Virus record (IMG/VR): IMGVR_UViG_3300027969_000039
Coordinates: 239,058 to 303,057 of that record
Direction: 5' to 3' (one strand)
Length of the DNA: 64,000 bases
Of the stretch, positions 50,691-64,000 are shown piece after piece; within the stretch, counting starts at the first letter, position 1; each line of letters opens with the position of its first letter. Under the pieces are notes generated by a model that worked only from the letters and a program-made list of their open reading frames with translations, was not told the origin of the DNA and made no database searches. A program made the translations under genes and the position numbers.

Positions 50691-52016
50691 TTAAGTGCTC
50701 ATTTCTTTTAATAATTTATATGTAATTGGACTAACAATCTCTAATGATTGATCTCTCATTTGATCTAATTTATTAGTTATCTCAAAAAAATTAGTAAGTT
50801 CATGTGACAAATCTTCAGAGTTCATAAATTTTACTGCCCTATCTAGCTCCTTACAAAAAAACTTGTAATTAATTTCTTGTGTTTTTGTATTCATAATTCT
50901 TTCTTTATATGTTACCTTGCATTCTTCAAAATAGTTACTTATAAAAAGTTTACTAGTTAATGGAAAAATTTTAATATTATAACGTGCAGGTCCGTGTAAT
51001 AAATGTGAATCAAATTTTGTATCAGGGAAATTTTCAAATTTCCATAACATTAACTCTGGTAGCTGTAACAGGTTAAAAACCATAATGGTAGGAGATATAA
51101 CTGTTCTAAAATTTCCTTTTGCAGTAGTTAATTTAGACAAGTTATTTTCAATCTGTTTCCATTTACTTGGATATCGTATATAATCATTTAATTCTCCGAC
51201 TCCATCAATACTAGGAGCAATTTGAATCAGTTTAAAATGTTCCCATAGCCCCCATGCTTTTTTAGGTATGTTAGTGAGATTAGTCATTACTTCAATATAA
51301 ATTTGATTAGCATAACCCAATGAAATGCATTTTTCTAAAAAGCTATAATGATTGTCTATTAACAATGGCTCTCCGCCTATAATAAAAATATGCTTAAGAT
51401 TAGGTATATGCTTTTCTAAATTTTTCCAAAATAGTTCTTGTTCATGCCAATTATAAATATCTGTCTCTAGTTTTGCTTTTTCAGTTAAGTTTGTTATAAT
51501 TTTTAATTGATTACCCGATTGATCAGTAAAATAATTATTATTAAATAAAGTAACATGGTCATCATACCAAGCACTGGAATCAGTTGGGCCGCACATTCTA
51601 CATTTAAGATTGCATAGATTACCAAATCTTAAATCTGCATATTTAATGGGTACACTAGTTTCATCTATAGAACCATCTTCATTCGTTCTAGTTACTGCAT
51701 CATTTAATGAAAATTCTTTATTCCAATTCTCAATCATCTGTATTCTATTACTTCTATATCCAGTAGATTCTTCTTTCACGCACCTACTACACATTTTTGG
51801 AGACTCGTTAGCTAGTATAGTTTTTCTTACTTCTTTTAGAATTTTGGAATTTCTAAACGTTTCTAATCCATCTTTGGCTATATTAAAGTTTTCACCGTTG
51901 TCTTTTGTTATTGAACCTTTAGTAATAGAGGAATCTGCTTGACAACAAACTCGTAAATCACCGGTACTCCTAGTGCTTACTCCTATCCACGGCAACGGAC
52001 AATATGTATTAGACAT
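50691..52016 (-). CDS. Radical SAM protein with N-terminal twitch/SPASM domain
   Basis: CPLPW..LRVCC, CSRC, DLRFGNLCNLKCRMC, GGEPL. Confidence 0.9.
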   Translation of the reverse strand: MSNTYCPLPWIGVSTRSTGDLRVCCQADSSITKGSITKDNGENFNIAKDGLETFRNSKILKEVRKTILANESPKMCSRCVKEESTGYRSNRIQMIENWNKEFSLNDAVTRTNEDGSIDETSVPIKYADLRFGNLCNLKCRMCGPTDSSAWYDDHVTLFNNNYFTDQSGNQLKIITNLTEKAKLETDIYNWHEQELFWKNLEKHIPNLKHIFIIGGEPLLIDNHYSFLEKCISLGYANQIYIEVMTNLTNIPKKAWGLWEHFKLIQIAPSIDGVGELNDYIRYPSKWKQIENNLSKLTTAKGNFRTVISPTIMVFNLLQLPELMLWKFENFPDTKFDSHLLHGPARYNIKIFPLTSKLFISNYFEECKVTYKERIMNTKTQEINYKFFCKELDRAVKFMNSEDLSHELTNFFEITNKLDQMRDQSLEIVSPITYKLLKEMST

Positions 52017-52935
52017 AATTAGGAGACCATTTCTCAACTAAAGCATCTTGCTTACAATGACATTCATGTTTATATGTGCAAGTTATGGGTTCTGTTGGTA
52101 AAGTATATCCAGAATAAACATTGCCTATTTTTCCACCTACTCTTGGCCAGCATCTAGATATATCACCATTTGGATCAATTACAAAACGGTCTATTCCTGC
52201 ATTGCATTTCCAATCTGTAAAAATGTTTTTTTGATTCACTACTAAACTGTTCCAATTTGCTTGAACTCCGTTTAAAAAAATATTCTTTGGATATAAATCT
52301 AACCATGTTGGAAAACTAATAATAGAAGTTTTTTTAGGATATGATCGAATGTACTCTAATTGACTTTCAGTATATGGATATAACTCATCGCATATTAAAC
52401 TTTTTCTTACGGGTTTAATATCAATTAATATATCTAATTTTTCAAATTCCTTAATAGCAGTTAACCCTTTTTCCCAATAATCAGGCGTTATCAATAATGA
52501 AACCATTGGGAAACATTTATCTTTCATTATTTTAACAACCTGTACCAAATGCTCAGTGTCCACTTCTTTTGAGTGCCATGAAAACAAAAACATTGAATTG
52601 CTAGACTTAAACTGTTCCCAATATCTGAGAGTCCTAGATCCATTGGTGTTTATTTCAATCACAAGATTTTCATGTGAAACGCTATCCATAAATGCTTGTA
52701 ATTGCGGCCATTGTGTGGGTTCCCCACCTATTATCTCTAAACACACATGTGAGTTTTTTTGTCGTACTTTGTTAATAAAGTTAGCTACAGCTATATAATT
52801 TATATTCCATCTTTCAGAACCATCATTACTATTTGGGTGACAATAATCACATGTATAATTACACACATTATGTGGTTTAAACGATATCATTGCTATGTTT
52901 TTTGGACCAGAATTAGTTAAGTGAATAGGTATCAT
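52009..52935 (-). CDS. Radical SAM protein with C-terminal SPASM/twitch region
   Basis: CNYTCDYC, GGEPT, TNGSR, WKCNAG...RC...IGN...C....C.C..D. Confidence 0.9.
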   Translation of the reverse strand: MIPIHLTNSGPKNIAMISFKPHNVCNYTCDYCHPNSNDGSERWNINYIAVANFINKVRQKNSHVCLEIIGGEPTQWPQLQAFMDSVSHENLVIEINTNGSRTLRYWEQFKSSNSMFLFSWHSKEVDTEHLVQVVKIMKDKCFPMVSLLITPDYWEKGLTAIKEFEKLDILIDIKPVRKSLICDELYPYTESQLEYIRSYPKKTSIISFPTWLDLYPKNIFLNGVQANWNSLVVNQKNIFTDWKCNAGIDRFVIDPNGDISRCWPRVGGKIGNVYSGYTLPTEPITCTYKHECHCKQDALVEKWSPNYV

Positions 52936-54320
52936 TTAAATATATCTTTCATTTCTGGAAAAGTGTCATAAAAATTAGTACCGCGATATCTATCAACCTT
53001 CTCGAGGTAGTCTTTAGTTTCTGGTAATCTCACGCTCCAATCATCGCTTTTCATAAAGCTAATCATACCGCGCAGTCTATCAATACCATAAGACGCAACT
53101 TTCCAATCTTCTTTGGTTACTTTACCTTTGTGCCATGATGGAATACCTAACTCCCAATTTTCTTCCCACCACGGTATGAATTCTTCATACTTGCGTTCGC
53201 ACTCATCTTTGAACCATTTAGGCAATATCTTCACGTTCAAAAATGCAGGCCAATAGACAAAGTGATAGTTGATGCCACCCGCACCGAATGGCCACATATT
53301 TATTTTCTTGAAGTTCTGCTCTAACTTCCATTTTACAAAGTCTGGAATGTAATAAATGTTCAATGCGTTGACTGCACATGCAACAGTTATCTCTACATTG
53401 TCGCTAGTCTGTGTATCTAGTATATGAAATACTTCTTCTGTACGACTCCATTTGCTTGGATAACGTATGTAATCGTTCATCTCATGTATACTGTCTACAC
53501 TATAGTGAAAACGAACAATCTTGAAATGTTTCCATAATTCAAATAAATCTTCACGCCATTCTACTCCGTTACTGTTATAGCGTATCTCCATATCTTTAGC
53601 ATATCCTTGACGGATGCATTCTTCTAAGATATCATAGTGTTCTTCAATGATGAGACTCTCGCCACCTGCAAAATACAATTGCTTCATGTTTGGAATCTGT
53701 TCATAGAACTGTTTCCAAAATACTGGATTATTCTTGTGCCAATTATAGCTGCTTCCGTTTGTACTTCCTTTATTATCCCATTGCCATATCTCTTTTACAT
53801 TCTTATTTTCAATGGTAGGATAGATATTTTGCCATTCTTTAATCCAACCTGAACTGTCATGCGGGCTGCACATGATGCAAGCCAACTGACATTTAGTTCC
53901 AAATCTTAAATCAATATATGCTAATTGAGGTGGTACTTCGCCGTCACTTGTTGTCTCAGCTAATAACTTATCTAAGTCAACTCTTTCTTTCCAATACTTA
54001 GTTTCCCACATGCGTTTGCTGTTATGTCCTGCTCGTTCCTCTTCATAACACTTGCGACAGCTTGGTGGTTCTTCACCGTTCAACATCTGCTTACGCACGT
54101 TCCTCATGTAAGTACTATTCCAACTAGAGACAAAATCACTCACGTTCAGATTATTAGGACGACCTTCTTCATCTTTTAATATGCCTACATTACCACCACC
54201 AATTTTGTCATTAGTGATGCCTACACTACTAGCGTTGGCAGTACAGCATACACGCATCTGCCCATCTGGACGAGTGCTGAGATGTACCCAAGGTAAAATA
54301 CAGAATGTTTTAGAAGTCAT
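52932..54320 (-). CDS. Radical SAM protein with N-terminal twitch/SPASM domain
   Basis: CILPW..MRVCC, CRKC, DLRFGTKCQLACIMC, AGGE.L. Confidence 0.9.
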   Translation of the reverse strand: MTSKTFCILPWVHLSTRPDGQMRVCCTANASSVGITNDKIGGGNVGILKDEEGRPNNLNVSDFVSSWNSTYMRNVRKQMLNGEEPPSCRKCYEEERAGHNSKRMWETKYWKERVDLDKLLAETTSDGEVPPQLAYIDLRFGTKCQLACIMCSPHDSSGWIKEWQNIYPTIENKNVKEIWQWDNKGSTNGSSYNWHKNNPVFWKQFYEQIPNMKQLYFAGGESLIIEEHYDILEECIRQGYAKDMEIRYNSNGVEWREDLFELWKHFKIVRFHYSVDSIHEMNDYIRYPSKWSRTEEVFHILDTQTSDNVEITVACAVNALNIYYIPDFVKWKLEQNFKKINMWPFGAGGINYHFVYWPAFLNVKILPKWFKDECERKYEEFIPWWEENWELGIPSWHKGKVTKEDWKVASYGIDRLRGMISFMKSDDWSVRLPETKDYLEKVDRYRGTNFYDTFPEMKDIFK

Positions 54321-55503
54321 TTAATTTTATCAGTTCAGGGATAGTTTCCCAAGTGTTTTCATTTCTAAGTTTATCTATTTGTTTAGTTGTTTTGATGAAT
54401 AAATTTAAGTCTTTGAAATTAGAAGGTTTTGATAATTCTGCTAAAGTTTGTTTAAATTCTGAAATTATATTTGTTGAGTATTTATTGTCATATATATTTG
54501 CAAAAGATATAAGGTTATCGGTAATTGTTTTTTTAAATTCATCTGGAAGTACGCTTACGTTGTAATATGCAGGAGCTTCGATTAAATTAATATAAAAATT
54601 ATTCTTTTTAATTATCTTTGAATCAGTTAGATATGTAATAATATTAGGCAATCTACTAACATTTAATACTCCTACTGTTATTCCAATGCCAAATTTAATA
54701 AAATCAAAATTAGATAATTGTTTTAAATTAGATTCAACACTTTTCCATACTGTTCCGTAACGAACTAATTCAGCACGATCTCCAATCTCATCAATACTTG
54801 CCCATACACTTATCTTTTCAGAATTCCACTTGCGCCAATAATCTAGTATGTCTTTTTTTCCATATGTTAACGTAGAACAGTTTGTATTGTATCGTATACG
54901 TACATCAAATTTTTTATGTTCTACTAACATATCTAATATTTGCCAATGTTCAGGCATCAATAAAGGTTCTCCGCCTGCAAAATATATTTCTTCAACATTA
55001 TCAATTTGACTTTCTAAAAAATTAAAATCAATAGGAGTGTTTAATACTTTGTTTTGTTCAGATAACCATTTTAAATTAATTGCATCTTGTGTCCATGCGC
55101 TACTAAATGCAGGTCCGCAACTACGACATTTAAAATTACATAGATTGCTAAATCTAAAATCCCAATACTTCAAATGCATCGTAGAACAAGTTCCGTCAGA
55201 ATTTGTTATATTAGGTATATTTTTTAAAACATCTAAATAAGATTCATTGCGAGAATAACGATTACTTTTTCCGGTAACATCTTCTTTATCAAAACATGAA
55301 CTACATACAGTTGGACGAATGTTATTCATCATCTCACTTCGTAATTTCTTCATATTATCACTGTTCCATATTTCATTGATAGGTTGTGTATTAAGATCAC
55401 CGGCATGGTAATGCGGTTTAATCAAACAACACGGAACTACTTTACCATTTGGTTGAAAGTTTAAATGCACCCACGGAACAACACACAATGTTTTAGAAGT
55501 CAT
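54310..55503 (-). CDS. Radical SAM protein with N-terminal twitch/SPASM domain
   Basis: CVVPW..VPCC, CSSC, DFRFSNLCNFKCRSC, AGGEPL. Confidence 0.9.
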   Translation of the reverse strand: MTSKTLCVVPWVHLNFQPNGKVVPCCLIKPHYHAGDLNTQPINEIWNSDNMKKLRSEMMNNIRPTVCSSCFDKEDVTGKSNRYSRNESYLDVLKNIPNITNSDGTCSTMHLKYWDFRFSNLCNFKCRSCGPAFSSAWTQDAINLKWLSEQNKVLNTPIDFNFLESQIDNVEEIYFAGGEPLLMPEHWQILDMLVEHKKFDVRIRYNTNCSTLTYGKKDILDYWRKWNSEKISVWASIDEIGDRAELVRYGTVWKSVESNLKQLSNFDFIKFGIGITVGVLNVSRLPNIITYLTDSKIIKKNNFYINLIEAPAYYNVSVLPDEFKKTITDNLISFANIYDNKYSTNIISEFKQTLAELSKPSNFKDLNLFIKTTKQIDKLRNENTWETIPELIKLNDF

Positions 55504-55828
55504 TTTTTATTTCTTTAAATGAAATGTTTATACTATCATCTCTTACATCAGACTTATCTATGTTGTCATTTATTTTGTCACTACAAAATTTAGAACAAAC
55601 TGATTTTTCATTTTTCCAACTTTCTTCTATTTTTTTCATAGCTTGACTATTTTTCATTTCAGCTAAAGAATATTTTTTACCATCTAGCTGTTCATATAAA
55701 GGTCCTAAAAATTCTGTCACTTTATTAATATATGGTTCATTTGCTATCCAGCAACATGGAAAATAGAAGCCATGAGCAGAAATATAGTCTGATGTTAATC
55801 CTTTTTTACATCTAGGATAAATTAACAT
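55493..55828 (-). CDS. Stand-alone SPASM/twitch Fe-S domain
   Basis: PRC...ISAHG.YFPCCW...IEESW....VCSKFC; GAGG RBS. Confidence 0.7.
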   Translation of the reverse strand: MLIYPRCKKGLTSDYISAHGFYFPCCWIANEPYINKVTEFLGPLYEQLDGKKYSLAEMKNSQAMKKIEESWKNEKSVCSKFCSDKINDNIDKSDVRDDSINISFKEIKNDF

Positions 55829-56456
55829 AGCGCCTCTGTACTTCTTGCCAATCTATCGTTGGTGTTAATGGATCTTCACTTTCATATCTTACACTTTTTA
55901 CAATGCTAAATTCATGGAATCCTAATTTTCTTGCTAAGTATATACCTTCGTCAATATTGTATTGATTATACTTAAATAAAATCCATTTCCAAATTATTTT
56001 AATATTAGGATTATATTCTACTAAAGTCTTAATACCGTTTTCAATAGTTTCCCACTTGCTATTAACTCTATATAAATGATTGTTGTTTGGTAATCCATCT
56101 ATTGAAAATACAATGTTGTCACGATGGTCAAGTATGCTTGCTGTTTCTTTCCACCAATCGATACTTCTAAATGCACCATTAGTATGCATACCTATACTCA
56201 TGTGGGGATGTGCTGTTCGTATACTAGATATTAATTCGTGAAATTTAGGGTGATATATAGGATCACCGTGATTGCCACACATGACAAACTTCTTTTTTCC
56301 CTCAGCTAATTTTACGGTAGTGTCAATATCACAATCTTCTAATTTAATATTATCAATTGACAATGTTCGCGGGCAATGCGGACATGCTAACGTACACCTA
56401 CTAGTAGGTTCTATGTGTAGTACTCTGTCATCTATCCAAATATCTTCATTATTCAT
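55812..56456 (-). CDS. Radical SAM core domain (lacks auxiliary domain)
   Basis: HIEPTSRCTLACPHCPR, CGNHGDPI, HTNG, FSIDG, YR. Confidence 0.88.
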   Translation of the reverse strand: MNNEDIWIDDRVLHIEPTSRCTLACPHCPRTLSIDNIKLEDCDIDTTVKLAEGKKKFVMCGNHGDPIYHPKFHELISSIRTAHPHMSIGMHTNGAFRSIDWWKETASILDHRDNIVFSIDGLPNNNHLYRVNSKWETIENGIKTLVEYNPNIKIIWKWILFKYNQYNIDEGIYLARKLGFHEFSIVKSVRYESEDPLTPTIDWQEVQRRYVNLS

Positions 56457-56461
56457 GCTAT

Positions 56462-57730
56462 TTAAATAACAAATTCATCTAACCATGGAAATAAAGGTTT
56501 CCAATTTAAATTTCTTCTTCTATCTATATCATCTAGTTGAATTTTTAGTTCTTTTACTAATTCAGGGCAATAAGGTTGATTATTAATAGTATCACGATAT
56601 CCACTAAGTTTTTCTTTGAGATATTCAGATGGTGCAACTGCAATCATCCTGTCAAAATCTTCATCAAAAAACCCATTAGGAAATATATCGGCTCGCAAAT
56701 AAGTCATATAGTCAGCAAAACTAAAAGAAATTTCAATTAGCGAAAGATCATTTGTTGTTCTGATATTGTTATAATAATTAATTTTTTCAATTAATTCTGG
56801 ATATGTTTTTATAGTTAAGTTGCACATAGTAGAATGTACTACTAATTTTATTTTAGGGTATTCTGCTATTAACGTTTTAAAATTTTCTTCCCATTGAATT
56901 AAATCTAAACCATGTCTAACATATTCTTCTTGTGGTCCCCATGCATCAATGCTACAAAATATTCTAAAAGATTTTATATGATTTTTAGTAACTAAATTTT
57001 CTACTTTATCTAATATTTTTCTAAATTTAGTATTTGATACTTTTAAATTTGAAAAAATACTAAAAATTAATTCAGGGCATGGATTTGTTTCAAAAAATTC
57101 TATATTTTGTTCAAACTCAGGTTGAAAAAATGGCTCACCACCTAACAAATTATATTCTCTTATAGACAATGCATTTTTTTCCAACCAAGCCCAATATTTT
57201 TTTACTAATATGGGATAGTCTTTTTTTCTGTCAATATGTTTATCTAACTCTTTTTGTGATTTTAAATTAAATTTAATATCTTCATTTTCCCATACCGTGC
57301 TATATTCTGAATTGCAATAAAGGCAAGCCATGTTACATAAATTATTGAAATATACTTCAACAATAGTTGGCGATACTTTAATAGCTTTATTATTATTTAA
57401 CAATTCAACAGCAGGTTTTACATAGTGTTTGCTAGTAGGATGCACGTTTAAATTTACACTCATCCTATCACTAATGCCACCACTCTTTTCAATTTTTTCG
57501 CAATATTCACATCCTTTGCCGGGCCAACGGCCATCTAACATATCTTTCCTGGTACTTAATTTTAAAGGAGTATTGTGAAAATCTTCAATGTTTTCAACTG
57601 TTATTTCATCGGGGTTTACTCTATGACAACTGTTTGTTTTTTTAGCATATATATTTATTGAACTCCATGAAAATTTCCACACACAAGCCGGTTCCGGCAT
57701 TCCATATATATCTTTAAAATTATTTTTCAT
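56462..57730 (-). CDS. Radical SAM protein with N-terminal twitch domain
   Basis: C.WK..WS...SCHRV, CEYC, EVYFNNLCNMACLYC, GGEPF; ATGA overlap places the start at 57730. Confidence 0.9.
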   Translation of the reverse strand: MKNNFKDIYGMPEPACVWKFSWSSINIYAKKTNSCHRVNPDEITVENIEDFHNTPLKLSTRKDMLDGRWPGKGCEYCEKIEKSGGISDRMSVNLNVHPTSKHYVKPAVELLNNNKAIKVSPTIVEVYFNNLCNMACLYCNSEYSTVWENEDIKFNLKSQKELDKHIDRKKDYPILVKKYWAWLEKNALSIREYNLLGGEPFFQPEFEQNIEFFETNPCPELIFSIFSNLKVSNTKFRKILDKVENLVTKNHIKSFRIFCSIDAWGPQEEYVRHGLDLIQWEENFKTLIAEYPKIKLVVHSTMCNLTIKTYPELIEKINYYNNIRTTNDLSLIEISFSFADYMTYLRADIFPNGFFDEDFDRMIAVAPSEYLKEKLSGYRDTINNQPYCPELVKELKIQLDDIDRRRNLNWKPLFPWLDEFVI

Positions 57731-58395
57731 ATGAGTCTTCCAAATCCCCATTTTCTTTCATGGCACCACCAGCAAGTTTCACAATGTGGTGTTGACCAAT
57801 CATAAGTCTTAGCTTCGCAACTTTTAGTGATTGGAAATAATGTATCCATCAAGTTAAAATGATTATATAATTCTGCTATTCCTTTTTTATCTAAATTAGC
57901 AAAAGGTCTATAACATCTAGGTCCCGGCATAACTGATTTTATTTCTTCTGTGCGGTCTCTCCTAAAATCTCTCTCGTCTATCACAGCTTCATTAAATGAA
58001 TTGCACACTTCAGGTGGTGGATTGCAATTAATACCAGTGACATGGCAATCAATAATTTCATTTTTATACGCTCCTTCAGTCAGTATATCTTGTGCATCTT
58101 GTAATTCGGGTCCTTCCATTACAGGATCACAATGTAAATGTTCACTAAATTTGATATCAAATTCTTTCTCACAAAATTCTATTACTCTTTTACTAAAAAT
58201 AAATTGATAAGGTTTTAAAATATTGACCGCAGTTATAGGATGTATACTGATTTCTGGTCTTTCAGTTACTTTATACTTCGATAGTATATAGCAGATCATG
58301 GCGCTATCTGCGCCGCCTGAGATTTTAATTCCCACTTTATTGAATTGTGGATCTATAGTAAAATCTATATCCTGTTGAGAATTTTTGATAAACAT
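57727..58395 (-). CDS. QueC-like PP-loop protein (second copy)
   Basis: SGGADS, NPP, RPF.NLDK, TKSC...HC..CWWC.ER.WGF. Confidence 0.75.
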   Translation of the reverse strand: MFIKNSQQDIDFTIDPQFNKVGIKISGGADSAMICYILSKYKVTERPEISIHPITAVNILKPYQFIFSKRVIEFCEKEFDIKFSEHLHCDPVMEGPELQDAQDILTEGAYKNEIIDCHVTGINCNPPPEVCNSFNEAVIDERDFRRDRTEEIKSVMPGPRCYRPFANLDKKGIAELYNHFNLMDTLFPITKSCEAKTYDWSTPHCETCWWCHERKWGFGRLI

Positions 58396-58397
58396 GA

Positions 58398-59483
58398 TTA
58401 CTTAAATTGTTCTGTGAATACATCAAACTCTGTGCCGCATTTTTGTGAACACACTTCTAATTTCCCTGCTGCTACACTAGATAATTTCCAACTTGATTCT
58501 ATTTTTGAAAATAATTTACTATTGTCAATAACATCACTCAAATCGTTGTTGATAACATCGATGCCTTTTTTACCGCCTGTATTATCAATTATGTGCCAAA
58601 TTTGTTCTATTCTGTAATCTTCATGCCACCATTTATACATTCTACCTGCTGTCCAGCAGCAAGGCATAAGCAGTCCTTCGGCAGTGATAAAAATATTACC
58701 TTCTTTAACAACCTTACAATCTATTTTACAACTGTCATAGTATTTAGTCATGCTCCCGTGTTGAGCAATTAATTCTTGTTCTTTGGATAAAACACGATTT
58801 TGAAATTCTTCTTTAGGTTTTTTAAGCAATATAGTTTCCGTGCCTTTCCGATTTTGTGCTTGATGTTCTTCTTTTCCTTGATTTCTTGCAGTGCTAAAAA
58901 ATCTAGCAGTTTTCTTTTTAGTAAATTTTTCACATCCCCACTCATTTGCTAACTTTTCGGCTTCTTCCACTTGATGTTGATTGTGTTCAAATATGATATA
59001 ATCCCATCTTGCTCTGCCACCTGCATTGATAAAACTACGCATACTGTTTTCTACTATACTCCATTTAACATTTTGGCGATATAGATGATTAGTATCTACT
59101 AACCCATCCACAGAGAATATTACAGCACCTTTGTTGTTGTATATCTTGGCTAATTCTGTCCACCAATCAGTATCTCTAGCCCCTGCGTTAGTATTCATAC
59201 TGAGCCACATGTTTGCATTATGTTCTCTAAAATATCGAAATACTTCTAGTGTATCTCTAGCAACTATTGGATCACCTAAATTACCGCACATGTACATTGT
59301 GTCTAGCTGACTAATAAATTTTGTGGAGAATATCTTTTTGCAATCATCTAAAGATAGTTCAGCATTGGTGATGTGTTTATTATCTTTGCCACCGTTCTCG
59401 TTGCGGTCACACATTGGACATGCTGCTTGACATAACTGTGTTATCTCTAAATGAACTTTCTTTATATCTTTTGATTTATACAT
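58398..59483 (-). CDS. Radical SAM protein with C-terminal twitch domain
   Basis: HLEITQLCQAACPMC, CGNLGDP, FSVDG, C...FITAEG..PCCW...C...C. Confidence 0.9.
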   Translation of the reverse strand: MYKSKDIKKVHLEITQLCQAACPMCDRNENGGKDNKHITNAELSLDDCKKIFSTKFISQLDTMYMCGNLGDPIVARDTLEVFRYFREHNANMWLSMNTNAGARDTDWWTELAKIYNNKGAVIFSVDGLVDTNHLYRQNVKWSIVENSMRSFINAGGRARWDYIIFEHNQHQVEEAEKLANEWGCEKFTKKKTARFFSTARNQGKEEHQAQNRKGTETILLKKPKEEFQNRVLSKEQELIAQHGSMTKYYDSCKIDCKVVKEGNIFITAEGLLMPCCWTAGRMYKWWHEDYRIEQIWHIIDNTGGKKGIDVINNDLSDVIDNSKLFSKIESSWKLSSVAAGKLEVCSQKCGTEFDVFTEQFK

Positions 59484-60175
59484 TATTTTATGCCGATACG
59501 CATATATCGTGTGTACTTATCAAGCGCCAATTCACCTTCATATAGCATAGTAGACATTGGAGATTGTATTCTAAATTCTTCTAAGCTATTAGAACAATTT
59601 ATATGATCTTCAATCTCAACGTAGTTATTGGTTTGAAGTATAACTATCTTATTATTAGGTATGTTATTGTACCAAACATCAAAATTATGTATATGTTCAC
59701 AGCTAGTATTGATGATGGTGTTTGCAGAATCAGTTAATTCTAATTTACTTCTATCATATCTATGAGTTTCATATTTAAAATTTTCATAAATTAGATTATG
59801 TATATCTACTGTAGCTGCTTTAAATTGCCAATTATTTTTTACTTTTTCTCTGTTTATAGTTTCTGCTACTCGTTCACACAACGGATCAATGTCAAAGCTA
59901 CGAATTTTATCTATTATGCAACTACTCTCAAATAACATTGGTGCTAATGTAGCATACCAACCAGCACATAAAAATATGATACCTAAATCTAAGTTTAATT
60001 TTTCTAATTCAGATACTAACCATCGTTTACTTTTTAGTTGTCCCCAGCTTAACGCATCAGACAAGTCAGCACCCTCATTATCAACTGCATTGCATAATTG
60101 ACTAAACAATTTGTTTTGAGTTAAAACAAACATTCTTCCAAACGTATCTTTATCATCTGTCCAATTAATTGTCAT
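59483..60175 (-). CDS. SAM-dependent methyltransferase-like protein
   Basis: GQLKSK.WL, LCAGWYA, SFDIDP, INTSCEH, RYMRIG. Confidence 0.6.
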   Translation of the reverse strand: MTINWTDDKDTFGRMFVLTQNKLFSQLCNAVDNEGADLSDALSWGQLKSKRWLVSELEKLNLDLGIIFLCAGWYATLAPMLFESSCIIDKIRSFDIDPLCERVAETINREKVKNNWQFKAATVDIHNLIYENFKYETHRYDRSKLELTDSANTIINTSCEHIHNFDVWYNNIPNNKIVILQTNNYVEIEDHINCSNSLEEFRIQSPMSTMLYEGELALDKYTRYMRIGIK

Positions 60176-61751
60176 CAAATTTCTCCTTTAACCAATCAAA
60201 GTTATTAATCTTTGATAGTGCTAGTAAATGGCCTTTATTTAATGTTCCGTATGATCTGCCTTGAATTGCACCAGCAATCGCATATTTACCATATGGTCTA
60301 TCAGCACCCACTGTACACCATGTTTCCAATCTATTAAATGTTTCCTCATCGTTCTGTCTGTCAATGACTTTACTTGCTAGTTTGCAACATTCTCTAAATG
60401 CACTACGCCAAGCACTAAATGCGTCAGTATTGAAATTTGTTATGTTGCTAACTTCAAATACGGGCTTGTACTTAGTGCTGATACTGGTGGTCATGTCAGG
60501 CTTACTCAAGTCCATGTTGATTGTTAACTCTCTAGGGAATAACTTGATGCCACCAAATCCATACTCTAAGTCATTGACTGGATTCTTACTGCGCCAAACA
60601 TAAACCCAGTCCATCTTGTCTGGATGAACGATATAGTCAAAATTAAAATTCTTGTTTATTACGGCATCACCATCTACTATCCAAACCATCTTAGTGTTGG
60701 CTAACTTAGCAGCAGTAATATGTGCATTATGTATACCTTTAACACCGTCAACTCTTTTTGCTCTTGGGAATCTACGCTTAAGATTAGTCCAATTCTCCTC
60801 AGCATTAGGTTCATTGTATGTTACCATAATAATATCATATTCATACTCATTAATAGTATCAACTGAGTGTATCGTTTTGGGTTGTCTATCGGGGTTGAAT
60901 TCTAAAGTTTTAATGAATTTGCTTTGTTCACTAGTAAATGGTTCACATATTGGGATAATGCTACCTAAAGTTTTGCATTCGTTTACTGCATCTAACACTG
61001 ACATTTTTTCTACCGTAGATTTATACAAATCATTTAAATAATCAAAATCTCTTACTTGAGTAAAATCCCAATTTGTATATTGTGTTTTATAACATCCTTG
61101 TCTAGCACCTAATATAGCCCATATGCCATTATTAACCTCTATTCCAGTAGTCATCCAAATTTTTAGTCTATTTAAATTACCTATGTTTAAGTCTGCTAAT
61201 TCATCGACTTTAATTCCGTTATGCAAGCACATCTTTACCCCTTCACGGAATCCAGCACGCCATGCTTGCAACTGGCTAGTATTATTGTGTATTATAGAAT
61301 ATGACTTATCTATTGCCATATAATTTAATGCCCAACAAAAATCTACTTGAGTCATGGGATCATTTAGATCCGCTGCCTCATGTGTTTTCATATCAAGCAT
61401 TGCTTGTACAGGCCAACATTTGATTCCCCCGTTGCCGTACAATAAACCGTTGATGATATTCTTACTGGGCCAACTAAAGACTGTTTTACTGTCATCGATT
61501 GAATCATCTAACACTAGTGTCTGATGTAGATATTTGTGGTCAATAACCGCATCGCCGTCAATGACTGATACTCGTGGGGTAGTTGCTAATTTTGCAACCG
61601 CTTTGTGTGCAGCGTCACTACCTTTAACTCCATGAACCCTTTTGGCATAAGGAATTTTTGTTAACAAATCTTCCCAATTTGCTTGTGCATTTGGCTCATC
61701 ATAGCTAAGATAGACAACATCGTATTCGTAGATTTTAAATTCTTTACTCAT
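60165..61751 (-). CDS. Protein with two tandem GT-A glycosyltransferase-like domains
   Basis: Two copies of YD....Y.EPNA..NW..L...P.AKRV.GVKG...AH...A.......DGD ... N..N.L.YG.GGIK ... AWR..FRE..K. Confidence 0.65.
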   Translation of the reverse strand: MSKEFKIYEYDVVYLSYDEPNAQANWEDLLTKIPYAKRVHGVKGSDAAHKAVAKLATTPRVSVIDGDAVIDHKYLHQTLVLDDSIDDSKTVFSWPSKNIINGLLYGNGGIKCWPVQAMLDMKTHEAADLNDPMTQVDFCWALNYMAIDKSYSIIHNNTSQLQAWRAGFREGVKMCLHNGIKVDELADLNIGNLNRLKIWMTTGIEVNNGIWAILGARQGCYKTQYTNWDFTQVRDFDYLNDLYKSTVEKMSVLDAVNECKTLGSIIPICEPFTSEQSKFIKTLEFNPDRQPKTIHSVDTINEYEYDIIMVTYNEPNAEENWTNLKRRFPRAKRVDGVKGIHNAHITAAKLANTKMVWIVDGDAVINKNFNFDYIVHPDKMDWVYVWRSKNPVNDLEYGFGGIKLFPRELTINMDLSKPDMTTSISTKYKPVFEVSNITNFNTDAFSAWRSAFRECCKLASKVIDRQNDEETFNRLETWCTVGADRPYGKYAIAGAIQGRSYGTLNKGHLLALSKINNFDWLKEKFDDN

Positions 61752-61810
61752 ACGAATATTTAATATAAATAAAGGATGATGCGTAATTTGTGTTTTGGGT
61801 AAATTGAAGG

Positions 61811-61839
61811 TTGACTTCTATTCAGAACTACTATATAAT
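61811..61839 (+). promoter_or_regulatory. Sigma70-type promoter
   Basis: TTGACT(61811-16)-17 nt-TATAAT(61834-39). Confidence 0.75.
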
Positions 61840-61906
61840 ACACACATAAACGCAAAAAACACTATGTAATTTGCAGTTATTTTTAACCAGGACTAAATAG
61901 AATACT

Positions 61907-62041
61907 ATGATGAATAAAACTTGTTACATGCCGAAACATACGGGGCTATGGTCTATAGAGACCTTAGCGGCCTTTGCGGTATCATATCCTACAAGTATTC
62001 GCGGGAATGATAACCAAAGAGGAGCCCGGGGAGAGGAATAA
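61907..62041 (+). CDS. 44-aa putative leader peptide (not in ORF track)
   Basis: MMNKTCYMPKHTGLWSIETLAAFAVSYPTSIRGNDNQRGARGEE*; lies between promoter elements and a terminator; TAAATA 7 nt upstream of the ATG. Confidence 0.55.
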   Translation: MMNKTCYMPKHTGLWSIETLAAFAVSYPTSIRGNDNQRGARGEE

Positions 62042-62068
62042 CTAGTTACATCATAACAAAATTTATTC

Positions 62069-62103
62069 AACCCCTGGGAAACTAAAAAGTCTCAGGGGTT
62101 TTT
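62069..62103 (+). terminator. Intrinsic terminator / attenuator hairpin
   Basis: AACCCCTGGGA-10 nt loop-TCTCAGGGGTT (11 bp, one G-U) running into a T tract. Confidence 0.8.
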
Positions 62104-62128
62104 CGTTGTATAAAAACAACAAACAGAG

Positions 62129-62157
62129 TTTACAGTAAATGGATACTCTGATATACT
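62129..62157 (+). promoter_or_regulatory. Sigma70-type promoter with extended -10, upstream of the tRNA array
   Basis: TTTACA(62129-34)-17 nt-TATACT(62152-57), preceded by TG. Confidence 0.65.
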
Positions 62158-62204
62158 AAGGGTTAATTAAGAAGCAACTACAAAGTTGCGTAGTGGAGAG
62201 TTAG

Positions 62205-62399
62205 ATAGTGTGTATAGGTAACGAGGACCTAGTCTGCACTTAAAACATGGACGAACGGGCGGCCTAGAGGATGAAGTCTCTTTTGTGAGATGAAAAATTC
62301 TAGCGTATTGAAACATATTAAAACACGCCCCTAGTAGCAGTAGCGAATCAAGGGTGTAATGTTGAGTGTGTTTCAATACACACATTCGCAAGAGTGTGT
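62205..62399 (+). ncRNA. Candidate structured RNA(s) at the head of the tRNA array
   Basis: Several stems, including the 15-bp GTATTGAAACATATT/AGTGTGTTTCAATAC helix and a GCAA-tetraloop hairpin. Confidence 0.4.
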
Positions 62400-62411
62400 T
62401 AACAAACATGT

Positions 62412-62487
62412 TGGGGTGTCGCCTAGTGGCCTAAGGCAACGGTCTTTGAAATCGTCATCATGGGTTCGAATCCCATCTCCCCTGCCA
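62412..62487 (+). tRNA. tRNA-Gln(TTG)
   Basis: Cloverleaf; ACGGT-CT TTG AA-ATCGT; TTCGAAT; CCA. Confidence 0.9.
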
Positions 62488-62494
62488 AATTTAT

Positions 62495-62573
62495 TCCGTA
62501 GAATCCGAGCATGGTGCACGGACTTGACTGTTAATCAATGACTAGCTGGGATCATTACCCAGATACGGAGCCA
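62495..62573 (+). tRNA. tRNA-Asn(GTT)
   Basis: TTGA-CT GTT AA-TCAA; variant T-loop ATCATTA; GCCA end. Confidence 0.8.
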
Positions 62574-62579
62574 ATTTTA

Positions 62580-62653
62580 GCCCTTTTCGTATAACGGTAT
62601 TACGCCTGTTTTGTAATCAGGATACGGCAGTTCAATTCTGTCATGGGGCACCA
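62580..62653 (+). tRNA. tRNA-Thr(TGT)
   Basis: CCTGT-TT TGT AA-TCAGG; TTCAATT; ACCA. Confidence 0.8.
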
Positions 62654-62658
62654 GTTTT

Positions 62659-62717
62659 AGGATAGCAACAGCAAATCAAAAAAACTTTCAACGTTTATGA
62701 AAAAAAATGCTATCCTG
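62659..62717 (+). ncRNA. Mini RNA: AGGATAG...CTATCCTG stem enclosing an anticodon-arm-sized hairpin
   Basis: 9-bp AGGATAGCA/TGCTATCCT stem, CAGCAA motif, TTTCA-ACGTTTA-TGAAA. Confidence 0.55.
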
Positions 62718-62726
62718 TTTTATTAT

Positions 62727-62800
62727 GCGTGGTTAGTTTAACGGAAAAATCAGTGGTTGCCAACTACTAGTCAAGGGTTCGACTCCCTTACCCCGCACCA
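62727..62800 (+). tRNA. tRNA-Gly(GCC)
   Basis: AGTGG-TT GCC AA-CTACT; TTCGACT; ACCA. Confidence 0.88.
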
Positions 62801-62807
62801 ATTTTAT

Positions 62808-62882
62808 GCCTGGTTAGTTCAGCGGAAGAACGTCTGCCCGATTAGCGGAATGTCGTAGGTTCGACTCCTACACTAGGTACCA
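62808..62882 (+). tRNA. tRNA-Ile(GAT) with non-canonical loop (C33, U37)
   Basis: TCTGC-CC GAT TA-GCGGA; otherwise a complete cloverleaf with CCA. Confidence 0.75.
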
Positions 62883-62887
62883 GTTTA

Positions 62888-62999
62888 AGGATAGGTTCAG
62901 CAAATAATTTAACTACTACTCTGTAAAAGTAAAGGAACGGTTCGACTCCGTAGCCGCAAGGTTTGGTGTAACGGTAGCACTATGTTAAAAACTATCCTG
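62888..62999 (+). ncRNA. Circularly permuted tRNA-mimic RNA (YrlA/Y-RNA-like) with Tyr(GTA) anticodon arm
   Basis: Inside an AGGATAG/CTATCCT stem the order is anticodon arm, T arm, GCAA-capped acceptor, D arm. Confidence 0.7.
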
Positions 63000-63008
63000 T
63001 TATTTTAT

Positions 63009-63083
63009 ATTCCGTGAGGCAGCTGGCGTGGCCGATAGTCCTTCAAACTATTGAGATGGGATCAAAACCCATACGGAATACCA
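63009..63083 (+). tRNA. tRNA with loop CCTTCAA: Glu(TTC) with C33, or TCA opal-suppressor register
   Basis: ATTCCGT/ACGGAAT acceptor; ATAGT/ACTAT anticodon stem; T-loop ATCAAAA; ACCA. Confidence 0.65.
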
Positions 63084-63089
63084 ATCAAT

Positions 63090-63166
63090 GCGACCGTAAC
63101 TCAGCTGGATAGAGTACTAGGCTACGAACTTAGGAGTCGGGAGTTCGAATCTCTCCGGTCGCACCA
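63090..63166 (+). tRNA. tRNA-Arg(ACG)
   Basis: CTAGG-CT ACG AA-CTTAG; canonical. Confidence 0.93.
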
Positions 63167-63170
63167 ATTT

Positions 63171-63244
63171 GCTCTTTTAGTATAAAGGTATTATAATACA
63201 TTGGTAATGTATAGACGCTGGATCGTTACCAGCAAGGAGCACCA
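63171..63244 (+). tRNA. tRNA-Thr(GGT)
   Basis: ATACA-TT GGT AA-TGTAT; T-loop ATCGTTA; ACCA. Confidence 0.85.
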
Positions 63245-63338
63245 TATAAGAACACACTGCTTGCCTGACTGCAAAAGTCGTGGTAAACTACAAGAGAAAG
63301 GGGTTCAAATCCCCGGGACTGGTAGTGTGTTTCTATAT
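63245..63338 (+). ncRNA. Long-stem RNA carrying a T-arm-like hairpin
   Basis: TATAAGAACACACTGC/GTAGTGTGTTTCTATA stem enclosing GACT-GCAAA-AGTC, GTGGTAAAC and GGGG-TTCAAAT-CCCC. Confidence 0.5.
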
Positions 63339-63414
63339 GGTAATATAGCATAGTGGCTAATGCAACTGCTTCATACGCAGTCTATCGTTGGTTCGAGTCC
63401 AACTATTACCACCA
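63339..63414 (+). tRNA. tRNA-Met or Ile2 (CAT)
   Basis: ACTGC-TT CAT AC-GCAGT; ACCA; G1-C72 pair, so not an initiator. Confidence 0.88.
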
Positions 63415-63423
63415 AACAATTTT

Positions 63424-63499
63424 GCCTCTATAACTCAGTTGGTAGAGTATCGTGTTGATAACGCGGAAGTCCTTGGTTCAAGTCCAAGTGGAGGCACCA
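63424..63499 (+). tRNA. tRNA-Ile(GAT), canonical loop
   Basis: TCGTG-TT GAT AA-CGCGG; ACCA. Confidence 0.9.
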
Positions 63500-63505
63500 A
63501 AATTT

Positions 63506-63579
63506 GGGCTGCTAGTATAATGGGATTACACTGGCCTTGCAAGTCAGTTATTGGGGTTCGATTCCCCAGCGGTCCACCA
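63506..63579 (+). tRNA. tRNA-Ala(TGC)
   Basis: CTGGC-CT TGC AA-GTCAG; G3-U70; ACCA. Confidence 0.92.
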
Positions 63580-63588
63580 AGTTTTTAT

Positions 63589-63697
63589 GGGTTGTCAAGG
63601 TTGGTCTCATGCACGGTGAATAGCCGTAGGAGCATTATCGAGTGTGCGCCACCGCACTCTTGGTCTGACAAGGGTTCAAGTCCCTTACAATCCACCA
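63589..63697 (+). ncRNA. 109-nt tmRNA-like / D-armless alanine-identity RNA
   Basis: GGGTTGT/ACAATCC-A-CCA with G3-U70; GAC-AAGGG-TTCAAGT-CCCTT; interior of non-tRNA hairpins. Confidence 0.6.
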
Positions 63698-63705
63698 AGT
63701 TTTAT

Positions 63706-63784
63706 CTGTGTGTGAGAAAGTCCGGTCTAATCTACTCGCCTTGGAAGTGAGAAATCGTAGGTTCAAATCCTACCGCACAGACCA
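63706..63784 (+). tRNA. tRNA-Pro(TGG)
   Basis: CTCGC-CT TGG AA-GTGAG; C1-G72, A73. Confidence 0.9.
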
Positions 63785-63793
63785 ATTATTTAC

Positions 63794-63870
63794 GGTGACC
63801 ATAGTGTAAAGGTTTAGCACCTCGCTCTGTGAAAGCGATAGAATGGGATCGTTCCCCATTGGTTACCCCA
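63794..63870 (+). tRNA. tRNA-His(GTG) with encoded G-1
   Basis: TCGCT-CT GTG AA-AGCGA; G-1:C73; CCA. Confidence 0.9.
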
Positions 63871-63875
63871 ATCAT

Positions 63876-63952
63876 GCCCTGGTAGCGCAATTGGTAGAGG
63901 CAATGGTCTAAGAAGCCATCAAGTGCGAGTTCGAATCTCGCCTAGGGCACCA
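63876..63952 (+). tRNA. tRNA-Leu(AAG), short variable loop
   Basis: ATGGT-CT AAG AA-GCCAT; 5-nt variable region; ACCA. Confidence 0.82.
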
Positions 63953-63963
63953 AACAAATTTAC

Positions 63964-64000
63964 GCCCCGCTGGACAAATCTGGCAAAGTCGCTTCTCTCA
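63964..64000 (+). tRNA. Partial tRNA (probably Leu, anticodon CAN), truncated by the window end
   Basis: GCCCCGC-TG-GAC...TGGCAAA-GTC-G-CTTCT-CT-CA... Confidence 0.6.

What the first reader, a model, noticed from the sequence alone, without database searches (positions are those of the whole stretch)
62659..62717. Second member of an AGGATAG-NNN-CAGCAA...CTATCCTG RNA family carrying only an anticodon-sized hairpin
Seen: this 59-nt spacer shares its ends with the permuted element at 62888 (AGGATAG, 3 nt, CAGCAAAT ... CTATCCTGTT). Its cargo is a 5-bp stem with a 7-nt loop, TTTCA-AC GTT TA-TGAAA, flanked by A runs; this is anticodon-arm geometry with a central GTT (Asn), C33 and U37. Inference: a common protein-binding scaffold that presents interchangeable anticodon loops, i.e. 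a modular decoy family.
Basis: partly seen in the sequence, partly recalled or inferred. Interest (0 to 1): 0.75.

Follow-up and report, generated by a model that had tools for sequence, protein, structure and literature searches.

The report
Phage Y-like RNA with anticodon mimic
This 59-base stretch between tRNA genes of a giant freshwater phage is one copy of a widespread, so far undescribed small-RNA family whose conserved closing stem travels with a phage Ro60-like protein gene and whose tip imitates a tRNA anticodon arm, so it is most likely a viral "Y RNA", not a spacer.

Summary
Window 62659-62717 and 62888-62999 share a scaffold: A-GGAUNN, three bases, CAGCAA(A), cargo, an A-run, NNAUCC-U-G-UU. 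A covariance model of it finds 177 copies in 76 motif-selected viral loci, 1-7 per tRNA array, and only these two in the 303-kb record. Both helices covary. 64 of 81 distinct small copies carry a stem of at least 5 bp with a 7-nt loop, with the profile C32 U33 NNN A37 A38.

The commonest neighbouring gene is a ~470-aa DUF2828/DUF7788 protein. Its predicted fold matches Ro60/Rsr over its full length. Loci fetched through that protein alone carry the RNA on the gene's strand, usually directly upstream.

A fuller assembly of the same phage places this gene about 10 kb downstream of the finding, behind four more family members. The same scaffold flanks homologous genes in cultured Listeria, Mycobacterium, Synechococcus and E. 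coli phages.

Best reading: a Y-RNA-like partner of a phage Ro60-like protein, co-transcribed with tRNAs, presenting an anticodon-arm mimic. In this copy the mimic is degenerate (C33, U37). Protein binding and the "decoy" role are inferred, not shown. It is a new variant of a known kind.

The parts
62659..62717 (+). Element A (the finding): small Y-RNA-like gene, from A0 to the invariant 3' G
   Evidence: R1 hit at 63.7 bits, E 3e-13. Identical copies occur in at least 6 other contigs.
62659..62667 (+). Closing stem P1, 5' strand (AGGAUAGCA), pairing with 62708-62716
   Evidence: Fold; family-wide covariation with 100% of cells paired.
62668..62675 (+). Invariant internal-loop motif ACAGCAAA, the proposed Ro60-like binding determinant
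   Evidence: CAGCAA was used to pick the motif-selected set. It recurs in Listeria, Mycobacterium, Synechococcus and E. coli phage copies that were fetched through the protein alone.
62686..62702 (+). Apical anticodon-arm look-alike: 5-bp stem UUUCA/UGAAA with 7-nt loop ACGUUUA (GUU at 34-36; non-canonical C33 and U37)
   Evidence: Sequence; family statistics on 7-nt loops and the C32 U33 NNN A37 A38 profile; helix covariation.
62703..62707 (+). 3' A-rich joiner (conserved A-run) before the P1 3' strand
   Evidence: A at 84-87% at positions -11 to -9 in 126 distinct copies; this was not imposed by the search.
62708..62719 (+). P1 3' strand UGCUAUCCU, then invariant G and UU
   Evidence: G at +1 in 100% and U at +2/+3 in 94%/91% of 126 distinct copies; not imposed by the search.
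62888..62999 (+). Element B: large family member. Same scaffold, with cargo made of an anticodon-like hairpin (62917-62931, loop CUGUAAA), a T-arm (62937-62951), a 4-bp acceptor-like stem capped by GCAA (62952-62963) and a D-arm (62965-62981)
   Evidence: R1 hit at 39.4 bits. The arms were parsed by eye. The Rfam YrlA model does not reach it.
62412..63952 (+). Part of the tRNA array hosting both elements. It runs on past the window end to 37 tRNAs in the fuller assembly
   Evidence: Elements start 6-8 nt after the upstream tRNA and end 11-13 nt before the next one.

Best explanation
Window 62659-62717 is a gene for a small non-coding RNA of a Y-RNA-like family.

Proposed mechanism:
1. It is transcribed as part of the polycistronic tRNA array and released by the same spacer processing as its tRNA neighbours (inferred from the stereotyped spacing).
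2. Its 5' and 3' ends pair into an 8-9-bp stem. This stem, with the adjoining internal loop (invariant ACAGCAA on the 5' side, an A-run on the 3' side) and the 3' G-UU, forms the docking module for the phage's Ro60-like ring protein, a DUF2828/DUF7788 protein with HEAT-repeat and vWA parts (inferred from gene linkage and analogy).
3. The apical module is exposed and variable. Here it is a 5-bp/7-nt hairpin built like a tRNA anticodon arm. In sister genes it is a canonical C-U-NNN-A-A loop, or a whole permuted tRNA-like domain as at 62888.
4. By analogy with Ro60-Y RNA particles, the apical module tethers or occupies a tRNA-recognising factor, and/or gates the protein's RNA-binding cavity. Candidate factors are an anticodon nuclease, a modification or repair enzyme, or an exonuclease (inferred).

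What is shown: family membership, structure and gene linkage. What is inferred: binding, processing and the cellular target.
For: Family and structure:
- 179 pattern hits in 76 viral loci; 145 lie within 100 nt of a same-strand tRNA.
- 177 CM hits at E<0.01.
- Both helices covary, with 0 of 500 shuffles reaching the observed score.
- 64 of 81 distinct small copies have a stem of at least 5 bp with a 7-nt loop, against a shuffle mean of 8.7 and a maximum of 16. The loop profile is C32 U33 NNN A37 A38.

Protein partner:
- The commonest neighbouring ORF (24 of 75 loci) lies on the same strand, with an element 15-330 nt upstream in most of them. It carries PF11443 and PF25043.
- Its AF2 model (pLDDT 76, pTM 0.70) matches only Ro60/Rsr/TROVE structures in the top 13 Foldseek hits, over about 500 columns. 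The best is 9kop/9l5y, E 1.6e-9, TM 0.52.
- A DxSxS MIDAS motif is conserved.

Reverse test:
- 79 loci were fetched through the protein alone; at least 575 viral contigs encode it.
- They give 99 R1 hits, all on the gene's strand. By my count about 64 loci have a hit ending less than 100 nt upstream of the gene.

This phage:
- Metagenome contig Ga0209087_1000001 (363.7 kb) is 100% identical to window 57394-64000.
- It continues with 37 tRNAs, two more family members inside the array, and then a promoter-like TTG...TATAAT, a large member, a small member, a Shine-Dalgarno site and a 472-aa DUF2828/DUF7788 gene. That gene starts about 10 kb downstream of the finding on the same strand.

Conservation beyond tRNA arrays and across host phyla:
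- The same stem plus ACAGCAA flanks homologous genes in Listeria phage SH3-3, Mycobacterium phage Lewan (no tRNAs in that locus), Synechococcus phage BUCT-ZZ01 and E. coli phage wV8.

Precedent:
- Thermus phage phiLo Ro60 binds two Y-like RNAs encoded upstream of its gene. They have a 5'-3' stem and a bulge carrying a short conserved motif (PMC12135203).
- Bacterial YrlA lies within 4 kb of rsr on the same strand (PMC4201824).
- Authors working on Felixounavirus Bas63 and on a P100-like Listeria phage guessed that Y RNAs lie beside their Ro60-like genes, without defining them (PMC11482910, PMC12282133).
Against: - No binding, processing or expression experiment exists for this family. RNA-library contigs cover the element, but DNA carry-over is not excluded.
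- The IMG/VR record that holds the window lacks the protein gene. The link for this phage rests on a second, fuller assembly.
- The canonical Ro-binding motifs (GGUCCGA, GNCGAAN0-1G, CGAA) are absent, and the Rfam YrlA model does not score the elements.
- Most copies lie kilobases from the protein gene inside tRNA arrays, so some could work without it.
- This copy's loop breaks two near-universal anticodon-loop rules (U33, purine 37).
- The R1 alignment is fitted to the model, and the first detection demanded a perfect 6-bp stem. Part of the P1 covariation in the motif-selected set is therefore built in. The cross-phylum copies are not subject to this.
Confidence: 0.65

Rival explanations
1. 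A free-standing anticodon-arm decoy. The RNA titrates an anticodon-directed host nuclease or tRNA-modifying enzyme on its own. The conserved stem only stabilises it and marks it for tRNA-type processing, and the Ro60-like protein is irrelevant.
For: - 45 of 77 distinct array-embedded small copies have canonical U33/R37 7-nt loops.
- 37 of 55 'anticodons' duplicate a true tRNA of the same locus.
- The RNAs sit in tRNA arrays, which the literature treats as putative anti-defence units (PMC12803027).
Against: - It does not explain the invariant ACAGCAA loop and 3' G-UU.
- It does not explain members whose cargo is not anticodon-like.
- It does not explain the tight, strand-specific linkage to the Ro60-like gene in phages without nearby tRNAs.
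- This particular copy has a non-canonical loop.
Confidence: 0.12
2. A processing or punctuation hairpin of the tRNA array (RNase E/III/P entry site or transcript stabiliser) with no function in trans.
For: Stereotyped spacing: the element begins 6-8 nt after the upstream CCA and ends 11-13 nt before the next tRNA. The flanks share the array's R-UUUU spacer consensus.
Against: - Only 2-7 of about 30-40 junctions per array carry one.
- The loop sequence is conserved across phyla, also outside arrays.
- The inner helix covaries and its loop keeps a defined size and profile.
- There is no terminator-like G+C stem with a long U-tract.
Confidence: 0.08
3. A cis-acting autoregulatory leader of the Ro60-like gene. 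Copies elsewhere are inert duplicates.
For: One copy lies directly in front of the Shine-Dalgarno site of the Ro60-like gene in most loci. In Vibrio phage ValKK3 a bare ACAGCAA sits in the leader.
Against: The finding lies about 10 kb upstream, between tRNA genes with no ORF to regulate. Array copies are conserved, keep covarying stems, and differ systematically in loop type. This reading still implies that the protein binds the scaffold.
Confidence: 0.06
4. A decayed tRNA gene, or a small mobile element with terminal inverted repeats that has spread through tRNA arrays.
For: Inverted-repeat ends, several copies per array, and shuffled positions between related phages. The cargo looks tRNA-derived.
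Against: - Stem changes are compensatory, not shared repeat sequence.
- The strand always equals the tRNA strand.
- It is never adjacent to its cognate tRNA (0 of 54).
- Conserved non-tRNA motifs are kept across host phyla.
- No tRNA model scores it.
Confidence: 0.04

Closest known systems
Bacterial Y RNAs YrlA/YrlB with Rsr (Ro60 orthologue); Rfam RF02553; PMC4201824
   Same: - The 5' and 3' ends pair into a stem next to a conserved loop motif.
- They are encoded near, and on the strand of, a Ro60-type ring protein gene.
- There are several different RNAs per genome.
- Large members carry a permuted tRNA-like domain: T-arm, closed acceptor stem, D-arm.
- A small partner lacks that domain.
   Different: - The motif is ACAGCAA within AGGAU...AUCCUG-UU, not GNCGAAN0-1G.
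- It is not detected by the Rfam model.
- The partner protein is scored by DUF2828/DUF7788, not by Pfam TROVE.
- Copies are interleaved in tRNA arrays, up to 7 per array.
- Small members, and the large one at 62888, display an anticodon arm, which YrlA lacks.
Thermus phage phiLo phiRo60 with Yrl1/Yrl2 (PMC12135203; PDB 9KOP, 9L5Y)
   Same: - A phage-encoded Ro60 homologue, the best structural match of the protein here.
- Two Y-like RNAs lie upstream of its gene.
- The architecture is stem-bulge-stem with a short conserved motif.
- Binding was shown by EMSA and cryo-EM in that system.
   Different: - A different motif (CGAA).
- No tRNA array context and no anticodon-like tips are reported.
- About 17% sequence identity between the proteins.
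- Nothing has been measured for the family described here.
tRNA anticodon stem-loop (positions 27-43)
   Same: A 5-bp stem and 7-nt loop with family-wide C32, U33, A37 and A38. The loops equal those of real tRNAs (CUUUUAA, CUUGAAA, CUGUAAA and others).
   Different: - No acceptor end, no CCA, and no D or T arm in small members.
- The stems are AU-rich and unlike those of the phage's own cognate tRNAs.
- This copy has C33 and U37.
Ro60-like gp130 of Felixounavirus Bas63, a counter of the Ppl defence (preprint PMC11482910)
   Same: Bas63 gp130 was not compared here. Its relation to the window phage's protein is inferred through another Felixounavirus: wV8 gp47 is 39% identical to the window phage's protein, and its gene sits directly upstream of a tRNA stretch in which I find the same RNA scaffold.
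   Different: The authors only guessed that some 'tRNA genes' might be Y RNAs. No RNA was defined, and no link between the RNAs and the Ppl phenotype has been tested.

Membership tests
Y RNA / YrlA-type (Ro60-associated ncRNA) | The 5' and 3' ends pair into a stem that flanks an internal loop or bulge | tested here: met
   8-10-bp closing stem; 100% of cells paired with compensatory changes.
Y RNA / YrlA-type (Ro60-associated ncRNA) | Conserved Ro-binding motif GGUCCGA / GNCGAAN0-1G / CGAA in the 5' strand | tested here: not met
   The invariant motif is ACAGCAA. The defining motifs are quoted from PMC4201824 and PMC12135203.
Y RNA / YrlA-type (Ro60-associated ncRNA) | Encoded close to a Ro60 orthologue and on the same strand | tested here: met
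   Family-wide. This phage: the gene lies about 10 kb downstream on the same strand in the fuller assembly, with two members directly upstream of it. The finding itself lies beyond the 4-kb criterion of PMC4201824.
Y RNA / YrlA-type (Ro60-associated ncRNA) | Reaches the Rfam RF02553 gathering score | tested here: not met
   No YrlA hit on either element at E<=10. The two weak YrlA hits span adjacent tRNAs.
Y RNA / YrlA-type (Ro60-associated ncRNA) | tRNA-like domain (T-arm, closed acceptor stem, D-arm) | tested here: not met
   Element A has only one hairpin. Element B at 62888 and many large members do have the domain, parsed by eye.
Y RNA / YrlA-type (Ro60-associated ncRNA) | Physically bound by the Ro60-type protein | not testable with these tools
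This needs RIP/CLIP or EMSA.
Ro60/TROVE proteins (for the linked gene) | HEAT-repeat ring plus C-terminal vWA domain with a MIDAS motif | tested here: met
   Full-length Foldseek matches to Ro60/Rsr structures; VDVSGSM is conserved.
Ro60/TROVE proteins (for the linked gene) | Match to Pfam TROVE (PF05731) | tested here: not met
   No hit in six records. The family is scored by PF11443 and PF25043 instead.
tRNA | Cloverleaf with a free acceptor end, recognised by tRNA models | tested here: not met
   ARAGORN and Rfam tRNA call the neighbours but not 62659-62717. No CCA is present.
Intrinsic terminator / simple processing hairpin | G+C-rich stem followed by a U-tract, with no conserved loop content | tested here: not met
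   The stem is A+U-rich, the 40-nt interior has conserved motifs and a covarying inner helix, and tRNAs continue downstream.

The most novel reading that the evidence does not exclude
Phage Ro60-like rings are loaded from a genomic 'cassette library' of Y-like RNAs whose exchangeable tips copy particular tRNA anticodon arms. Each tip aims the particle at an anticodon-specific host factor, such as an anticodon nuclease of an abortive-infection or retron/PARIS-type defence, or a modification enzyme. The particle would trap that factor, or couple it to repair or decay. That would make this a mimicry-programmed anti-defence platform that evolves by swapping 7-nt loops.
Probability: 0.2. Interest if true: 0.9.

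Novelty: new variant of a known kind. Interest (0 to 1): 0.72.

Why it matters
Ro60-like (DUF2828) genes occur in at least 702 cultured phage records and in hundreds of viral contigs. One of them counters a bacterial defence (PMC11482910), and another is packaged into virions (PMC12282133). Their RNA partners have so far only been guessed at.

A defined, searchable RNA family gives those partners concrete sequences in tractable phages: E. coli Felixounaviruses, Listeria P100-like phages and mycobacteriophages. The family has a stem, an ACAGCAA loop, a 3' G-UU and variable tips.

It also explains unannotated 'gaps' in phage tRNA arrays. It adds a new kind of tRNA mimic, a bare anticodon arm on a protein-docking stem. 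And it turns the question of what phage Ro particles recognise into an experiment.

Tried and rejected
- Pfam TROVE search of the window's record and of five other records: no hit. This was misleading, because the partner is a TROVE-fold protein that Pfam files under DUF2828/DUF7788.
- Rfam at gathering and at E<=10: nothing. A Dictyostelium class I RNA match at E 0.63 was judged chance.
- BLAST of both elements against 50,697 cultured phage records: no match or chance matches only. The covariance model was needed to see the cultured-phage copies.
- GTDB genome scan: only 3-4 true copies, all on short tRNA-rich contigs that look like binned phage DNA. This is not a cellular element.
- nhmmer profile of the alignment: too insensitive, 21 hits against 99 with the CM. 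Its distance statistics were discarded.
- Complex prediction with the Ro60-like protein plus element A RNA: not folded and no verdict. It is not evidence either way.
- Metatranscriptome contigs laid on 61800-64000: they cover both elements but cannot exclude DNA and give no ends.
- Hypothesis that each mimic sits beside, or derives from, its cognate tRNA: rejected. 0 of 54 are adjacent, and phage tRNA-Lys stems (CCGG/CCGG) differ from the mimic stems.
- Kink-turn, self-cleaving ribozyme, CRISPR-repeat (RNA anti-CRISPR) and Hfq (ARN)n readings of the scaffold were considered from memory. No supporting feature was found and none was tested further.
- Absence of the protein gene from G000 and G002: explained by both assemblies ending at the same point inside the tRNA array.

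Full report
**Setting.** The window is the last 64 kb of a 303,057-bp IMG/VR virus record, estimated 86% complete. From 62412 to the window end it is a dense same-strand tRNA array. The finding, 62659-62717, fills the gap between two tRNAs.

**Checking the observation.**
- Both stretches read A-GGATAG, three bases, CAGCAAAT ... N-CTATCCT-G-TT.
- The 5' motif occurs exactly twice in the window and twice in the whole record.
- The ends pair into an 8-10-bp stem (z = -3.8 against shuffles).
- Inside lies TTTCA-ACGTTTA-TGAAA between A-runs, as described.
- RNAfold prefers a competing 4-bp register.

**A real and large family.**
About 75 of them close with CTATCCT 45-105 nt downstream.
- A looser pattern finds 179 elements in 76 loci. 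Of these, 145 lie within 100 nt of a same-strand tRNA, with 1-7 per array of 15-45 tRNAs.
- Features not imposed by the search are nearly invariant. These are A before GGAU (98%), G after AUCCU (100%), then UU (94% and 91%), and an A-run before the 3' strand.
- The covariance model R1 was built from 44 diverse small members. It finds 177 hits at E<0.01 in 737 kb, all in the expected orientation, and only the two known ones in the window and in the whole record.
- On 95 distinct sequences the closing stem is 100% paired, with double changes at 5 of 7 pairs. The inner helix is 89.5% paired, with double changes at all 5 pairs. No shuffle in 500, and no slid register, comes close.
- Caveat: the alignment is fitted to the model, and my first detection demanded a perfect 6-bp stem. 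Copies later found through a protein, in phages of other phyla, show stems such as AGAAU/AUUCU, AGGUU/AACCU, AGGGU/ACCCU, AGACC/GGUCU, UGGAC/GUCCA and AGAGA/UCUCU. That covariation is free of the bias.

**The cargo.**
- Of 81 distinct small members, 64 have a stem of at least 5 bp closed by a 7-nt loop. Shuffled interiors give a mean of 8.7 and a maximum of 16, and other loop sizes are not enriched.
- Among the 73 small members that have at least a 4-bp stem closing a 7-nt loop, the loop profile is C32 in 47, U33 in 60, A37 in 53 and A38 in 53. That is the anticodon-loop signature.
- The middle triplets include UUU (commonest), UGA, GUA, UCU, GUU, CGA, UGU, GCU, CUU and GGA.
- 37 of 55 also occur as a true tRNA in the same locus. 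The mimic never sits next to its cognate tRNA (0 of 54). Its AU-rich stem differs from those of the phage's own tRNAs.
- The copy in the window is a drifted member, ACGUUUA with C33 and U37. Close relatives have AUGUUUA, CUGUUUA, CUGUAAA, CUGGAAA or CUUUUAA on the same stem.
- Large members carry other cargo. Many have a T-arm, a closed acceptor-like stem and a D-arm, which is the YrlA architecture. Element B at 62888 has these plus an anticodon-like hairpin with CUGUAAA.

**The protein partner.**
- I clustered all ORFs of the motif-selected loci. The commonest family (24 of 75 loci) is a ~470-aa protein on the elements' strand, with an element 15-330 nt upstream in most of those loci. Pfam scores it as DUF2828 plus DUF7788.
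- An AlphaFold2 model from a 12-sequence alignment (pLDDT 76, pTM 0.70) matches Ro60-type structures over its full length. These include Thermus phage phiLo Ro60 (E 1.6e-9, TM about 0.52), D. radiodurans Rsr, and Xenopus and human Ro60. They fill the top 13 Foldseek ranks; isolated vWA domains follow. A MIDAS-type DxSxS motif is invariant.
- GenBank annotators already call the mycobacteriophage homologues 'Ro-like RNA binding protein'.
- The Pfam TROVE model misses the family. That is why the direct TROVE test was negative.

**Reverse test.**
- I fetched loci through the protein alone. At least 575 viral contigs encode it, and the best 80 were kept. R1 gives 99 hits in these loci, every one on the gene's strand.
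- By my count, about 64 of 79 loci have a hit ending within about 100 nt upstream of the coding match.
- The gene-proximal copy reads AGAAUGUUAACAGCAAC...ACAUUCUG, followed by the Shine-Dalgarno site and the ATG.
- Both element-bearing records that are at least 90% complete have the gene.

**This phage.**
- The IMG/VR record and a twin record both end at the same point inside the array. That explains why the gene was not found there.
- A metagenome contig of 363,713 bp is 100% identical to window 57394-64000, and I walked along it.
- The array runs to 37 tRNAs and holds two more family members. One of them has a canonical Lys-type CUUUUAA tip.
- About 0.8 kb past the last tRNA come a promoter-like TTG...TATAAT, a ~170-nt member with the same stem as element B, a 56-nt member, a Shine-Dalgarno site and a 472-aa DUF2828/DUF7788 gene.
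- The gene starts about 10 kb downstream of the finding, on the same strand. This phage therefore has six family members and the protein.

**Reach.**
- The protein family occurs in 702 cultured phage records. R1, or inspection, finds the scaffold beside the gene in several of them:
  - Synechococcus phage BUCT-ZZ01: 42.9 bits, tip CUUUUAC.
  - Mycobacterium phage Lewan: three copies just downstream of the gene, the middle one with a tRNA-like domain, and no tRNA genes in that locus.
  - E. coli phage wV8: copies between tRNAs directly downstream of the gene.
  - A P100-like Listeria phage: three tandem copies directly upstream of the gene.
- The linkage therefore does not depend on tRNA arrays.
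- In Vibrio phage ValKK3 only a bare ACAGCAA in the leader is visible.

**What is known.**
- Bacterial Y RNAs (YrlA/YrlB) and their tRNA-like domain are established, with the motif GNCGAAN0-1G. The search that defined them was restricted to TROVE-annotated genomes (PMC4201824).
- Thermus phage phiLo Ro60 binds two upstream Y-like RNAs with a CGAA bulge and engages host PNPase (PMC12135203).
- For the DUF2828-type proteins I found only guesses.
  - In Bas63 the Ro60-like gp130, upstream of the tRNA stretch, counters the Ppl defence, and 'some tRNA genes are possibly Y RNAs' (PMC11482910).
  - In a P100-like phage three highly transcribed unannotated regions within 2 kb upstream of the Rsr-like gene 'may be Y RNAs', and the protein is found in virions (PMC12282133). 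The three tandem copies I find in a related Listeria phage fit that description, but I could not align them to their coordinates.
- A search of the paper library for DUF2828 returned nothing relevant.

**Interpretation.**
- The finding is best read as a small Y-RNA-like gene. The conserved stem, ACAGCAA loop and G-UU would form the docking site for the Ro60-like ring, and an exposed anticodon-arm mimic the variable effector end.
- Shown: the family, its structure, the anticodon-like statistics, the fold of the linked protein, and the bidirectional gene linkage, including in this phage.
- Inferred: physical binding, tRNA-type processing, and any target of the tip.
- The 'decoy' idea remains an attractive but untested sub-hypothesis. 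It is weakened for this copy by C33 and U37, and for the family by members without anticodon-like tips.

**Verdict.** This is a new variant of a known kind, a Y-RNA-like family with a new docking motif, a tRNA-array habitat and anticodon-arm tips. It is of clear interest because it is widespread and testable in cultured phages.

Noticed in passing
window 50691-59483, minus strand: A run of about eight paralogous radical-SAM ORFs, one of them with a SPASM domain, plus a weak QueC-like ORF (57727-58395) directly upstream of the tRNA array. The same cluster recurs in related contigs. It may serve a nucleic-acid or peptide modification pathway.
   Followed up: partly
window 62580-62650: Rfam calls a tRNA here (53.7 bits) but ARAGORN does not. 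By eye the anticodon loop looks oversized (CCUG-UUUUGUAAU-CAGG). Further tRNA-sized stretches are uncalled by both tools: about 62490-62575, 63005-63085, 63245-63335 and 63585-63700.
   Followed up: no
window 61900-62400: Non-coding region ahead of the array. It has a terminator-like hairpin at about 62070-62105, a promoter-like stretch, and about 240 nt of unassigned G+C-richer sequence (62160-62400). RNA-library contigs cover it, and no Rfam family matches.
   Followed up: no
L008 14006-14150; L077 14324-14621: Related phage contigs carry a Polynucleobacter-1 RNA (RF01718, 83 bits) and a betaproteobacterial-type, possibly permuted, tmRNA. One true element copy sits in a contig binned with a Polynucleobacter MAG (L128). 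Together these hint at freshwater Burkholderiales hosts.
   Followed up: partly
L073, L076, L115: ARAGORN predicts a CUA-anticodon ('Pyl'/amber suppressor-type) tRNA near elements in some related contigs.
   Followed up: no
L238 14560-15150; L009 1166-1771 and 2010-2567; L059 2815-3288: Small metallophosphoesterase, dual-specificity-phosphatase-like and P-loop kinase (AAA_33) genes recur beside the arrays and the Ro60-like gene (in 14, 9 and 7 loci). In Cronobacter phage GAP32 an RNA ligase gene directly precedes the Ro60-like gene. This fits an RNA end-healing or repair neighbourhood.
   Followed up: partly
L220 2950-2990 (Vibrio phage ValKK3): The leader of the Ro60-like gene contains UUUACAGCAAUU between a promoter-like TATAAT and the Shine-Dalgarno site, with no obvious long stem. 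It may be a minimal autoregulatory binding site.
   Followed up: no
window end (64000) = end of G000 and of G002: Two independent IMG/VR records stop at the identical base inside the tRNA array, whereas a metagenome contig of 363.7 kb runs through. The array appears to be an assembly break-point, so the IMG/VR record lacks about 60 kb.
   Followed up: yes
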